Below, in pieces: positions 33,601-36,600 of a DNA stretch of 64,000 nucleotides (the first letter of the stretch is position 1; every line of letters begins with the position of its first letter). Both the position numbers and the translations under genes were made by a program. Location of the stretch: the NCBI RefSeq assembly GCF_001194135.2, contig NC_068981.1, positions 97,101,250-97,165,249 of the forward strand, in the 5' to 3' direction. The DNA comes from Octopus bimaculoides. Its lineage: Eukaryota. The notes under the pieces are model-generated. The model saw only the letters and a list, made by a program, of their open reading frames with translations, was not told the origin of the DNA and ran no database searches.

Positions 33601-36600
33601 TTCATAAAATTTACAACCCTGAAAAGTAAATCATCATTTTTTTCCCCCTAGGCTAGTCACTGCTATTACTTGGTATATATTTGTATGTGGGCAGGCAGGA
33701 ATATATTTATTTAATGTAATTATGTTATTGTTATGCAATTCAGTAATTGCATTTATTTGTATTAATTTGTGCATATAAGTTTGCTGTTGTTACTGCTGTT
33801 ATTTAGTTTTGTTACTTCTACTTGGGATGCAGCTTGCTTTTGTTCTGTGTATCTATTTATAATGACAATGAAACTGAACTAACTAAAGACAATCTTACAT
33901 TTATGTTTGGATAATTACAAATGCTCTCTGAATATTCTCACAGGGAAATTTTTTAAACTGAACTTTCAGAGACTTTTAGTCTGATGCATTGATATTCAAT
34001 GAAGAAAAATGATAACTAGAAAGACTGATCTCGATAGATTTTTGTGATAATTTTGTGATAATTCTGAAATCAGCTTTGAAATTATTATTTTTTTGATATC
34101 CTGTATAGATTTTCTGTGTTGTTTAGAGTCTTATGTACTTGTCTTTATCATAAATTGTGTTATATGAGATGTGCAAGTACTTCTTGGTCCTTGCTCAAAT
34201 ACTCATTCTGTTACTAGGAAAAGATGAGTGTGATTTGGTTGCTTATGAACTACTGATGATACTGTGCTGTATTTATGGAGCAACTCTGGGATTCTTCTTG
34301 TATATTAATTTCATTAAGGGTTGGGAAACATGCTGCCAGTAAAATACAGGTAAAGTAGACAACATAGGCATGGCAAGAAGCTTGCTTCCCAACCACATGA
34401 TTCTGGGTTCAGTTCCACTGTGTGACATCTTGGGCAAGTGTCTTCTACAATAGCCGTGGGCAAACCGAAGCCTTGTAAGTGGATTTGGTAGATAGAAACT
34501 GAAAGAAGCCTATCATATATGTCTATGTGTGTGTGTGTCTTTGTGCCTGTGTTTGTCCCCCCACCACTGCTTAACCAGTGCTAGTATGTTTACATCCCTG
34601 TAACATAGTGATTCAACAAAAGAGACCGATAGAATAAGTACCAGACTTAAAAAAATATGTACTAGGGTCAATTCATTCAACTAAAAGATTTCTGAAGACA
34701 GTACCCCAGCATAGCTGCAGTCTAATGACTGAAACAAGTAAAAGATAAAAGCTAATACATGCACGCGCGTTCTACAGAGCAACCTAAAGAAGCTTTGCTG
34801 GAATTTGGTCAGATCCAGTTGGCTTTATCTGGCTGGCATTGCCTCTATATTCTTTTGATGTCTTAAGGCTTAAAGGTCATCCCCTGCAGCATCATGACAG
34901 AAATTTCAAGTTAGTGATCAGAATTTGGTAGGCAGCATTTTTCTGTAAAGGCCTAATGGAAAATGCTGGCATTGTTTTTTATTGGTGTATTGACAGCTCC
35001 ATCTTGTTCGGTAAAACAAATTTGAGATTGGTCTCTTCTTCCAGATGATGAATTTACTATAATTCACAACTTCTTTCTGTTGAGGTTATCAAATCTATTA
35101 TTTAGTCTGAGATTGTTTTGCTTGACTCTGTCTTATTAACTGTACATCGCTTGGATAAAATTTTACCCATTTTCAAAGTATGTCATCATCATCATCATCA
35201 TCATCATCATTTGGCATTTGTTTTCTGTGCTGGCATGGGTTAGATGGTTTGACTAGAACTGATAAGACAGAGAGCTGCACCAGGCTCCAGTCTGTTTTGG
35301 CTTGGTTTCTACAGCTTGATGTTCCTCCTAACACCAACCACTCCACAGAGTGTAGTGGGTTCCTTTTATGAGTCAACAGTATAGGTGTCTTTTACATGTC
35401 ACCAGCATGGGTGCCTTTTACATATCACCAGCAGTGACCATGACTATAATTTCACTTGGCTCAGCATGTCTTCTCAAGCCCAGCAGATCACCAAAGGTCT
35501 TGGTCACTTGCCATTGCTTCCATGAGACTTAACATCCAAAGATTATACTTCACTAGCATAAAACTATGATCTGAGATAGCCAGATATATTAAAGCAACTA
35601 GAGTGTTTGTCAATGATTCAATACAAGTTTAAATTCAAGGAGAATCTTTTACTTTTAGGGTTGTGAATTTTTGTAGCCACTGAATCATTGTCATTGAATC
35701 ATTGATAAACACTCTAGTTGCTTTAATATATCTGGCTATCTCAGATCATAGTTTTATGCTAGTGAAGTATGATCTTTGGATGTTGAGTCTCATGGAGGTG
35801 ATGACAAGTGAATAAGACCTTTGGCGATTTGCTATGCTTGAGAAGGCACATCAAGCCAAGTGAAATCATAGTCACAGCCAGTGCCGGTGACATATAAAAG
35901 ATACCTGTGTTGGGGGACACATAAAAGGTATCCACTACACTCTGTAAAGGAGTTGGCATTAGAAAGGGCATCCAACTGTAGAAACCAAGCCAAAACAGAC
36001 TGGAGCCTGGTGCAGCTCTTCAGCTTACCAGTTCCAGTCAAATTATCTAACCCTTGCCAGCATGGAAAACAGATGATGATGATCATCAGTTAAAAAGAAA
36101 GAATTTAACATACTTTGAGAATAAGTGAAATTTTATACAAGCTAAGTACACAGTTAATAAGAGGGGGTTAAGCAAAATGATATCAGACTAAATAATAGAT
36201 TTGACAACCTCAGCAGAAAGAAGTTGTGACTTGTAGAAAATTCCTTTTTTGAAAGAAGAGACCAATCTCAAATTCCTCTCATTGAACAAAATGGAGCTAT
36301 TAATACAATGATAAAAGAGAAAACCAATATCTTCCATTATGAAGAAATTGTAGAATAATTTAGACACTGAAGATTTTATCAATAAATGGAATTATGAGGA
36401 CATGTGGTTCTGGGTTCAGTCCCACTGCGCTGCACCTTGGGCAAATGTCTCCTACTATAGGCCCTGAGCTAATCAAAGTCTTGTGAGTGGATTTTGTAGA
36501 TAGAGTCTGAAAGAAGCTTGTTGCACATGCATGCATGCTTGCTCGCTCATTTTAACTCTTTAGCATTTAAACTGGCTCACCTGTCCTACAATTAAACCTA

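What the first reader, a model, noticed from the sequence alone, without database searches (positions are those of the whole stretch)
34940..36360. 1.4-kb intronic palindrome with a 102-bp core that is fully paired only on the sense strand
Seen: the arms (~34940-35622 and 35693-~36360) are an old inverted duplication of unique DNA plus an RTE-tail fragment. The innermost 102 nt differ at just 3 positions, while the adjacent ~75 nt differ at about 16. All three core differences form G-U wobbles in the MORC2-sense RNA (A-C mismatches on the other strand). In the adjacent segment the differences split evenly between wobble and mismatch. Inference: either recent template-switch or gene-conversion homogenisation next to the loop, or selection for a long perfect RNA stem. 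Such a stem would be a strong ADAR substrate or a Dicer/Drosha source, and the longer hairpin contains sequence of the abundant RTE family. It is therefore a candidate hairpin-RNA locus producing anti-TE small RNAs from an intron of a TE-silencing gene. Three wobbles of three has a 1-in-8 chance probability, so the evidence is only suggestive.
Basis: partly seen in the sequence, partly recalled or inferred. Interest (0 to 1): 0.78.

Follow-up and report, generated by a model that had tools for sequence, protein, structure and literature searches.

The report
Intronic palindrome with homogenised centre
A real 1.4-kb inverted duplication inside a MORC2-like gene has a recently re-homogenised 102-bp centre that would fold into long double-stranded RNA, but nothing here shows it is more than a neutral structural relic, and the "anti-transposon small-RNA locus" idea is not supported.

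Summary
Arms 34954-35622 and 35693-36339 flank a 70-nt spacer. The innermost 102 nt differ at 3 sites, all G·U on the + strand. The rest of the arms is about 83% identical. The + strand is the sense strand of a MORC2-like gene whose 3' exons lie beyond the window, so the palindrome is intronic.

The identity jump is statistically real (permutation P about 1.5e-4). A second perfect 44-nt patch lies mid-arm (P = 0.006). The core boundary falls inside a non-LTR retrotransposon tail fragment, so the core is a conversion or template-switch tract, not a separate insertion.

Outside the six loop-proximal differences, wobble direction is exactly 30:30. Both strands fold almost equally well. The core shares no exact match longer than 12 nt with other TE copies in the window. 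Rfam matches are far below threshold, and no target-site duplication exists. A second palindrome in the same window has a longer perfect duplex (103 nt). A published survey of 32 molluscs found no endo-siRNAs.

Best reading: a neutral inverted duplication with patchy homogenisation, and probably one of many ADAR hyper-editing substrates.

One residual oddity remains. All six differences nearest the loop are sense-strand wobbles (P about 0.001 at the loop end, 0.09 anywhere along the arm). Orthologues could not be retrieved.

The parts
34954..35622 (.). Left arm of the palindrome: outer unique DNA 34954-~35182, microsatellite, TE tail fragment, inner unique DNA 35554-35622
   Evidence: Gapped alignment to the reverse complement of the right arm; the repeat finder I1-I3, I5, I6
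35623..35692 (.). Non-palindromic spacer (loop), 70 nt. It contains a short TGAATCAT tandem (35681-35705) at the right arm/loop junction
35693..36339 (.). Right arm of the palindrome
35521..35622 (+). Left half of the 102-nt near-identical core (99/102). It carries differences at 35530, 35544 and 35609. The longest perfect run is 35545-35608
35693..35794 (+). Right half of the core. It pairs with 35521-35622
35190..35553 (-). 5'-truncated 3' tail of a non-LTR retrotransposon family (left-arm copy). The tail points outward, and the fragment extends about 33 nt into the core
   Evidence: Self-BLAST hits to at least 10 copies; alignment A1 shows homology of the 20.6-kb and 56-kb copies through ~35540-35553; the RT signal sits upstream of the 20-kb copy
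35762..36086 (+). The same retrotransposon tail fragment in the right arm, in mirror orientation
35183..35210 (.). (TCA)9 microsatellite at the TE 3' end. The right-arm counterpart is much shorter, (GAT)n at ~36070-36086
   Evidence: TRF; sequence
35358..35433 (.). 26-nt tandem repeat, 2.9 copies, inside the TE tail. One extra copy relative to the right arm explains the 27-nt arm indel
35271..35314 (.). Second homogenised patch: a 44-nt perfect match to 35976-36019 in mid-arm
   Evidence: permutation P = 0.006 within the non-core arm
31085..31174 (+). Context: chromo-like exon of the MORC2-like host gene with a GTAAGT donor. It is the last recognisable exon upstream of the palindrome
   Evidence: tblastn with MORC2 relatives; sequence

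Best explanation
This is an old inverted duplication of about 670 bp of intronic DNA, consisting of unique sequence plus a 5'-truncated non-LTR retrotransposon tail, around a 70-nt spacer. It lies inside a MORC2-like gene. The arms have since diverged by about 17%. Parts were later re-homogenised arm against arm: a 102-nt tract abutting the loop, and a 44-nt patch in mid-arm. The mechanism was DNA-level template switching or intrachromosomal gene conversion. The three core differences arose after that event and are ordinary transitions. Where they can be polarised they are non-CpG C>T on the + strand, the commonest class locally. When the gene is transcribed, the intron must fold into a long hairpin with a roughly 100-bp almost perfect stem. 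By inference that makes it one of many repeat-type dsRNA substrates for ADAR hyper-editing, with no dedicated function. What is shown: the structure, the patchy identity, the TE content, the sense strand, and the absence of strand bias outside the loop-proximal sites. What is inferred: the formation mechanism, the homogenisation mechanism, transcription, and editing.
For: The palindrome and core are confirmed. Identity heterogeneity is significant, and a second tract exists. The core boundary at 35521 lies inside the TE fragment, which runs to ~35553 in both arms symmetrically, so the core is not a separate insertion. No target-site duplication is found beyond chance; 271 of 300 random controls do as well. 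Wobble direction is 36:30 over the arms and 30:30 outside the six innermost events. The local neutral strand asymmetry measured on 351 TE-copy transitions is negligible, 181:170, P = 0.59. The polarisable loop-proximal changes are mostly C>T on +, the most frequent class in the TE control. Both strands fold nearly equally well. A second, younger unique-sequence palindrome in the same window is about 96% identical with a 103-nt perfect run, so such structures arise repeatedly here. Literature: template switching creates and repairs perfect hairpins and homogenises inverted-repeat arms (PMC8794818, PMC5453318, PMC13100816). Arm-to-arm conversion occurs in palindromes (PMC8600007). Repeat-derived dsRNA hyper-editing is the main ADAR target across metazoans, including O. 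bimaculoides (PMC9989829).
Against: This could reflect selection on sense-RNA pairing or a strand-coordinated mutation cluster. No orthologue, transcript, editing or small-RNA data could be examined. Typical documented template-switch tracts are shorter than 102 nt; the largest in PMC8794818 was 59 bp.
Confidence: 0.8

Rival explanations
1. The loop-proximal stem of about 111 bp (35512-35622 with 35693-35803) is kept paired by selection on the sense transcript. It would act as a functional dsRNA element, for example an ADAR-recruiting or intron-processing element, or a precursor of small RNAs.
For: All six differences nearest the loop are G·U on the sense strand, with no transversion or indel among them. 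The sense fold is fully paired at -181.8 kcal/mol. Identity is highest exactly where a stem would nucleate.
Against: The sample is six sites, found post hoc. A run of that length anywhere along the arm has P = 0.087. The antisense fold is nearly as stable, and three A·C mismatches in 102 bp would not stop ADAR or Dicer. The rest of the arms shows no bias, 30:30. A better perfect duplex sits in another palindrome 16 kb away with a 4:3 wobble split. Molluscs show no endo-siRNAs in a 32-species survey (PMC12479628). The core shares at most a 12-mer with other TE copies in the window, so it has no obvious TE targets. Rfam hits are sub-threshold.
Confidence: 0.08
2. The strand-coordinated loop-proximal differences are a by-product of the homogenising event itself. 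Either the + strand was deaminated while single-stranded (a C>T cluster), or G·T misincorporations occurred while one arm was copied from the other on the same strand. Either route leaves wobble-type differences on the strand that switched. This is a neutral variant of the best explanation.
For: Four of the five polarisable differences are non-CpG C>T on the + strand, and they cluster within about 290 nt around the loop. The tract abuts the loop as expected for loop-primed synthesis (mechanism described in PMC8794818). It is established knowledge that repair synthesis with long single-stranded intermediates yields strand-coordinated clusters, and that G·T is the commonest polymerase mispair.
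Against: Derived states occur in both arms: 35518 and 35530 in the left arm, 35515 and 35516 in the right arm. That does not fit a single copying direction. Three errors in 102 nt would require a very error-prone polymerase. The TE control shows only a weak, non-significant C>T excess on + (odds ratio 1.27, P = 0.13).
Confidence: 0.1
3. The whole 1.4-kb unit is a foldback or long-TIR transposable element, or a composite MITE, rather than a local duplication.
For: The structure is long inverted arms with a short spacer. Two such units occur in 64 kb.
Against: No target-site duplication is found beyond chance. The non-TE parts of the arms have no other copy in the window. ORF translations of the arms find nothing in 5.8 billion proteins, and a core 24-mer finds nothing in the metagenome collection. 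The arms contain a 5'-truncated retrotransposon tail, which is not expected in TIRs. The two palindromes are unrelated in sequence.
Confidence: 0.03
4. It is an assembly artefact: a chimeric fold-back, or cross-arm polishing that falsely homogenised the centre.
For: The window is a gapped scaffold with ten N runs. Near-identical inverted repeats can attract mis-mapped reads during polishing.
Against: There is no gap within 3 kb of the palindrome. The arms are 17% diverged over about 570 bp each, with indels and a copy-number difference in a tandem repeat. Artefactual fold-backs do not produce that pattern. The core plus loop is only 274 bp and can be spanned by ordinary read pairs.
Confidence: 0.03

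Closest known systems
Quasi-palindrome correction / template-switch mutations (Löytynoja & Goldman 2017, PMC5453318; Mönttinen & Löytynoja 2022, PMC8794818; yeast inverted-repeat arm homogenisation, PMC13100816)
   Same: An imperfect inverted repeat has a tract next to the loop converted to near-perfect complementarity. The loop is retained. A perfect RNA-foldable stem results without selection.
   Different: The tract here (102 nt, or about 108) is longer than typical documented events of tens of nt. A second mid-arm patch cannot be loop-primed and fits recombinational conversion better. The event itself is inferred, not reconstructed on a phylogeny.
Arm-to-arm gene conversion in large sex-chromosome palindromes (e.g. 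PMC8600007, PMC3723533)
   Same: Inverted arms with a spacer, and identity maintained or restored by intrachromosomal conversion tracts.
   Different: Those palindromes are 10 kb to Mb in size, more than 99% identical throughout, and carry genes. This one is 1.4 kb, intronic, mostly decayed (83%), and has only short tracts.
Inverted-repeat ADAR substrates such as intronic or 3'UTR inverted Alu pairs; repeat-derived dsRNA hyper-editing across Metazoa (PMC9989829)
   Same: Intramolecular long dsRNA formed by nearby inverted copies within a transcribed region. This is the expected fate of this hairpin.
   Different: The arms are a local inverted duplication of mostly unique DNA, not two independent TE insertions. 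Editing was not tested here.
Drosophila hpRNA loci (endo-siRNA-producing long hairpins; own knowledge: Okamura et al. 2008, Czech et al. 2008)
   Same: A long inverted repeat able to fold into a stem of 100 bp or more from one transcript.
   Different: hpRNAs are defined by Dicer-2/AGO2-dependent 21-nt siRNAs with identifiable targets. No small-RNA data exist here, no target-length matches were found for the core, and molluscs appear to lack endo-siRNAs (PMC12479628).
MITE-derived miRNA hairpins (e.g. mir-548 from Made1; weak Rfam hit)
   Same: A palindromic repeat giving a hairpin transcript.
   Different: The score is 33.9 against a gathering score of 90. There is no target-site duplication and no family of copies, and the stem is far longer than an animal pri-miRNA stem.

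Membership tests
Palindrome homogenised by template switching / gene conversion | Two inverted arms separated by a spacer | tested here: met
   Arms 34954-35622 and 35693-36339 with a 70-nt spacer
Palindrome homogenised by template switching / gene conversion | Discrete tracts of arm identity well above the background divergence | tested here: met
   Core 99/102 against 82.6% elsewhere, permutation P = 1.5e-4; second 44-nt perfect patch, P = 0.006
Palindrome homogenised by template switching / gene conversion | The tract is continuous with the older arm, not an independent insertion | tested here: met
   TE-tail homology runs from outside the core to ~35553 and 35762 symmetrically
Palindrome homogenised by template switching / gene conversion | Phylogenetic proof: arms more alike within a species than orthologous arms are between species | not testable with these tools
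   No close relative is in the reachable collections
hpRNA / endo-siRNA hairpin locus | A single transcript folds into a long, nearly perfect dsRNA stem | tested here: met
   Sense fold -181.8 kcal/mol, z = -29. Transcription is inferred only from the intronic position
hpRNA / endo-siRNA hairpin locus | Dicer-type 20-24-nt duplex small RNAs, phased, mapping to the stem | not testable with these tools
   No small-RNA data. A survey of 32 molluscs reports no endo-siRNAs (PMC12479628)
hpRNA / endo-siRNA hairpin locus | Small-RNA-length complementarity to target genes or TEs | tested here: not met
   The core shares at most a 12-mer with the other 62.6 kb, including at least 10 copies of the TE family. 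Only the window was searched
ADAR hyper-editing substrate (inverted-repeat dsRNA) | Intramolecular dsRNA of tens to hundreds of bp within a transcribed region | tested here: met
   sense strand and intronic position
ADAR hyper-editing substrate (inverted-repeat dsRNA) | Clusters of A-to-G RNA-DNA differences on the transcribed strand | not testable with these tools
   No RNA-seq available
Foldback / long-TIR transposon or MITE | Target-site duplication flanking the termini | tested here: not met
   The best direct repeat is 5 nt, and 271 of 300 random boundary pairs do as well
Foldback / long-TIR transposon or MITE | Multiple dispersed copies | tested here: inconclusive
   No other copy of the unique arm parts in the window or in the databases. 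The genome itself was not searchable
Known miRNA / ncRNA family (Rfam) | Score at or above the family gathering threshold | tested here: not met
   MIR869 93 vs 330 bits; MIR4245 37 vs 74; mir-548 33.9 vs 90

The most novel reading that the evidence does not exclude
The roughly 111-bp loop-proximal stem is under selection to stay fully paired in the sense pre-mRNA of a MORC2-like gene, tolerating only G·U changes. It would be a functional intronic dsRNA element, such as an ADAR-recruiting or sensing element or a non-canonical small-RNA precursor, in an animal lineage thought to lack endo-siRNAs.
Probability: 0.08. Interest if true: 0.6.

Novelty: new member of a known kind. Interest (0 to 1): 0.22.

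Why it matters
As it stands, this is a clean, well-delimited example of a decaying intronic palindrome with local re-homogenisation. It shows how a near-perfect 100-bp RNA-foldable stem can arise and persist with no selection. That makes it a useful cautionary case for scans that treat perfect stems or wobble-only differences as evidence of function. If the sense-strand wobble pattern proved to be selected, it would point to a functional long dsRNA element in an intron. That would be notable in a lineage with heavy ADAR editing and apparently no siRNA pathway. The present evidence rests on six sites and no comparative data, which is far too thin to claim that.

Tried and rejected
(1) Cross-species test. 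The search for homologous proteins timed out three times. A CW-exon query then found only one 74%-identical ORF (P0151). Its locus L001 (ENA ERZ25069859) aligns to the window only in exons at 74-79% identity, so it is useless for the intron.

(2) Searches for other copies. Palindrome ORF translations found nothing among 5.8 billion proteins. An exact look-up of a 70-aa palindrome ORF found no record. A core 24-mer found nothing in the metagenome contigs.

(3) Neutral transcription-associated strand asymmetry as the cause of sense-strand wobbles. Rejected as sufficient, because TE copies give 181:170 and G+T is 51.6%.

(4) The core as a separate younger insertion (MITE). Rejected because TE homology crosses the core boundary.

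(5) Transposon origin. No target-site duplication.

(6) Known RNA families. Only sub-threshold generic hairpin hits.

(7) RTE clade assignment. Pfam sees only a borderline RVT_1 signal on a frameshift-stitched translation, so the clade is untested.

(8) 3' exons of the host gene. Not found in the window by tblastn or by motif search. A tblastn with human MORC2 recalled from memory was used only as a lead. The exons were confirmed by Pfam and by database relatives.

(9) Species identity ('Octopus'). Could not be verified.
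Full report
OBSERVATION

The region was read and searched for inverted repeats. The left arm was then aligned with gaps to the reverse complement of the right arm. 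The palindrome is real. The arms are 34954-35622(6) and 35693(88)-36339, around a 70-nt non-palindromic spacer at 35623-35692.

The innermost 102 nt (35521-35622 against 35693-35794) match at 99 positions. The three differences are at 35530 T/C, 35544 T/C and 35609 G/A. All are transitions that give G·U on the + strand and A·C on the - strand. The next ~75 nt outward carry 12 substitutions and 4 gap columns, split 5 +GU, 4 -GU and 3 transversions. Elsewhere the arms are 82.6% identical at aligned positions.

Permutation of the match and mismatch columns shows the heterogeneity is not chance:
- Best 102-column window: P = 1.5e-4.
- Longest perfect run (64 nt): P = 2.5e-4.
- A second perfect run of 44 nt in mid-arm (35271-35314 against 35976-36019): P = 0.006 within the non-core part.

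Identity is therefore patchy, not simply elevated at the loop.

ANATOMY OF THE ARMS

Self-BLAST of the region against the window shows that 35190-35553 and its mirror 35762-36086 belong to a dispersed family. That family has at least 10 other copies in the 64 kb, at 67-79% identity. One copy (20179-20705) lies immediately 3' of degenerate ORFs with reverse-transcriptase motifs split across frames. A frameshift-stitched translation hits Pfam RVT_1 at E = 2e-6, just under the gathering score, whereas the unstitched fragments did not score. The family is therefore the 3' tail of a non-LTR retrotransposon. The RTE clade was not tested.

The tails end in a triplet microsatellite, (TCA)9 at 35183-35210, and point outward. 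The 5'-truncated ends point toward the loop. A 26-nt tandem repeat inside the tail (35358-35433) has one more copy in the left arm, which explains the 27-nt indel. The outer 34954-~35182 and inner 35554-35622 segments have no other copy in the window.

A multiple alignment of both arms with other copies shows that the family homology continues to about 35540-35553. That is 20-33 nt inside the core, and it is symmetric in both arms. The core boundary at 35521 therefore lies within the TE fragment. The core is a tract of the old arms that has been made alike again, not an independent younger insertion.

No target-site duplication flanks the unit. The best direct repeat is 5 nt, and 271 of 300 random boundary pairs do as well.

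HOST GENE AND STRAND

Stop-to-stop ORFs outside repeats revealed + strand exons. Pfam assigns them to Morc6_S5 (E = 7e-8) and zf-CW (E = 2.8e-13). An exhaustive search of 1.84 billion representatives gave best hits of 61-69% identity. The sources name most of them ATPase MORC2/MORC2A-like (crinoid, amphioxus, acorn worm), and one bivalve hit is named MORC1-like.

tblastn with these relatives maps a chromo-like exon at 31085-31174, corresponding to residues 833-865 of a 1058-aa relative. This exon ends at a canonical TG|GTAAGT donor. About 190 further residues of the relatives include a conserved C-terminal block (CLRYFLPP…FFDxYExGL). They are not encoded anywhere in the window.

The 3' exons must therefore lie beyond 64000 or in N gaps. 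This places the palindrome inside the transcription unit, with + as the sense strand. This is inference from gene structure, because no transcript data were available. The species label 'Octopus' could not be checked.

IS THE SENSE STRAND SPECIAL?

Core plus loop folds to -181.8 kcal/mol on + and -165.4 on -. The whole palindrome folds to -829.3 against -815.2. Either transcript would be a long dsRNA.

Over all 66 transitions the split is 36 +GU to 30 -GU (P = 0.54).

As an internal control for neutral strand asymmetry, I aligned the in-window copies of two TE families to their consensus. I then counted changes in + strand terms. This gave 181 wobble-making (C>T and A>G) against 170 of the opposite type (P = 0.59), with G+T at 51.6%. 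So 0.5 is the right null among transitions.

Counting all event types, 3/3 has P = 0.025 for the sense strand or 0.049 for either strand.

The six differences nearest the loop (35609, 35544, 35530, 35518, 35516, 35515) are all +GU. Outside them the split is exactly 30:30. The probabilities are as follows:
- A same-type run of at least 6 starting at the loop end: permutation P = 0.0011, or 0.0023 for either end.
- Such a run anywhere along the arm: P = 0.087.
- If the arm is taken to extend to 35626, a 1-nt indel precedes the run.

Using other TE copies as outgroups, the polarisable changes are mostly non-CpG C>T on the + strand, and derived states occur in both arms. C>T is also the commonest class in the TE control. 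I regard this as a suggestive oddity, not evidence of function.

TESTS OF THE SMALL-RNA / ANTI-TE IDEA

Only about 33 nt of the well-paired core is TE-derived. The core shares no exact match longer than 12 nt with the remaining 62.6 kb, which includes all other copies of the family. The 21-26-nt matches lie in the poorly paired part of the arms.

An Rfam scan at a permissive E-value gives only generic long-hairpin hits far below gathering scores: MIR869 93 vs 330, MIR4245 37 vs 74, mir-548 33.9 vs 90.

A clade-wide survey of small RNAs in 32 molluscs, whose study animals included O. bimaculoides, reports miRNAs and piRNAs but 'no evidence of endo-siRNAs'. It suggests RNA editing as the fate of inverted-repeat dsRNA (PMC12479628). 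A 22-species editome study that included O. bimaculoides finds hyper-editing of repeat-derived long dsRNA to be the dominant and ancestral ADAR activity (PMC9989829). These apply only if the window is molluscan, which I could not verify.

LOCAL COMPARATOR

The window contains a second, unrelated unique-sequence palindrome: 51631-51985 against 52025-53023. It has a 39-nt loop and is about 96% identical. Its right arm is interrupted by 658 bp that include an N gap. It has a 103-nt perfect inverted match, longer than the 64-nt best run of the flagged core. It has a 4:3 wobble split and no gradient toward the loop. Several inverted SINE pairs also occur. Hairpin-capable inverted repeats are thus common here, and inverted duplications evidently arise repeatedly.

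MECHANISM

The best-supported account has four steps:
1. A retrotransposon tail inserted into the intron.
2. A segment of about 670 bp including it was duplicated in inverted orientation around a 70-nt spacer. Fold-back or template-switch replication is the usual route, but this is inferred.
3. The arms diverged by about 17%.
4. Short tracts were later homogenised. The youngest (about 3% diverged, roughly one sixth of the palindrome's age) starts exactly at the arm/loop junction and ends abruptly in a cluster of mismatches.

That geometry fits loop-primed or inter-strand template switching. Template switching is documented to create perfect stems and to correct imperfect ones while keeping the loop (PMC8794818; PMC5453318; PMC13100816). 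The mid-arm patch fits ordinary intrachromosomal gene conversion, as in larger palindromes (PMC8600007).

A neutral variant would account for the strand-coordinated differences. The loop-proximal wobble run could be a by-product of that event, through single-strand deamination or G·T misincorporation on the switching strand. However, the derived states in both arms argue against a single copying step.

WHAT COULD NOT BE DONE

No orthologous intron could be obtained. The homologue search timed out three times and then found only a distant relative whose introns do not align. Palindrome-derived queries found nothing. No RNA-seq, small-RNA or long-read data are reachable with these tools.

VERDICT

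The functional half, a hairpin-RNA locus making anti-TE small RNAs, is not supported and is disfavoured by several independent checks. It remains formally open at roughly 8% because of the six-site sense-strand wobble run. This is an ordinary member of a known kind of structure.

Noticed in passing
window 51631-53023: A second, unrelated unique-sequence palindrome. Arms are 51631-51985 and 52025-53023, about 96% identical, with a 39-nt loop and a 103-nt perfect inverted match (51642-51744 with 52910-53012). The right arm is interrupted by 658 bp (52126-52783) that contain an N gap. Two such inverted duplications in 64 kb suggest a recurrent process in this genome.
   Followed up: partly
window 17905-19221 (+): Adjacent ORFs with weak RVT_1 (E = 1.4e-3) and GIY-YIG endonuclease (E = 5e-4) matches. 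This domain pair is typical of Penelope-like retroelements, and it sits inside an intron of the MORC2-like gene.
   Followed up: partly
window 46648-47341 (+): ORF fragments, the last with a DDE_3 transposase match (E = 3.5e-4). Probably a decayed Tc1/mariner-type DNA transposon.
   Followed up: no
window 36401-36514, 34398-34509 and at least 12 other sites: A SINE-like family of about 100 nt with at least 14 copies in both orientations. It includes an inverted pair immediately 3' of the palindrome (36402-36514 with 36729-36841, 73% complementary).
   Followed up: partly
window 2081-31174 (+): Exon map of the MORC2-like gene: 2081-2224, 4777-4914 (Morc6_S5), 8405-8503 and 9701-9808 (zf-CW split by an intron), 11581-11676, ~15593-15840 (coiled coil), the acidic exon inside ORF 24023-24715, and 31085-31174 (chromo-like). 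The N-terminal ATPase exons and the C-terminal exons lie outside the window.
   Followed up: partly
window N runs: 1162-1171, 12124-12383, 19587-19688, 27508-27517, 39706-39733, 44453-44952, 52373-52631, 55602-55696, 58328-58537, 59853-60368: Ten assembly gaps, several flanked by dinucleotide microsatellites, so the window is scaffold-level sequence. The apparent 'palindrome' at 58256-58608 is a microsatellite and gap artefact.
   Followed up: no
L001 (ENA ERZ25069859 ctg22568, 69574-89879): A contig in a metagenome-labelled ENA assembly carries a MORC2-like gene, with Morc6_S5 and zf-CW ORFs in the same order as the window. Only its exons align to the window, at 74-79% nucleotide identity. 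It is presumably host or eukaryotic DNA from a distant relative.
   Followed up: partly
window 35681-35705: A short TGAATCAT-type tandem duplication sits exactly at the right arm/loop junction. It may be a junction or slippage scar from the event that formed or revised the palindrome centre.
   Followed up: no
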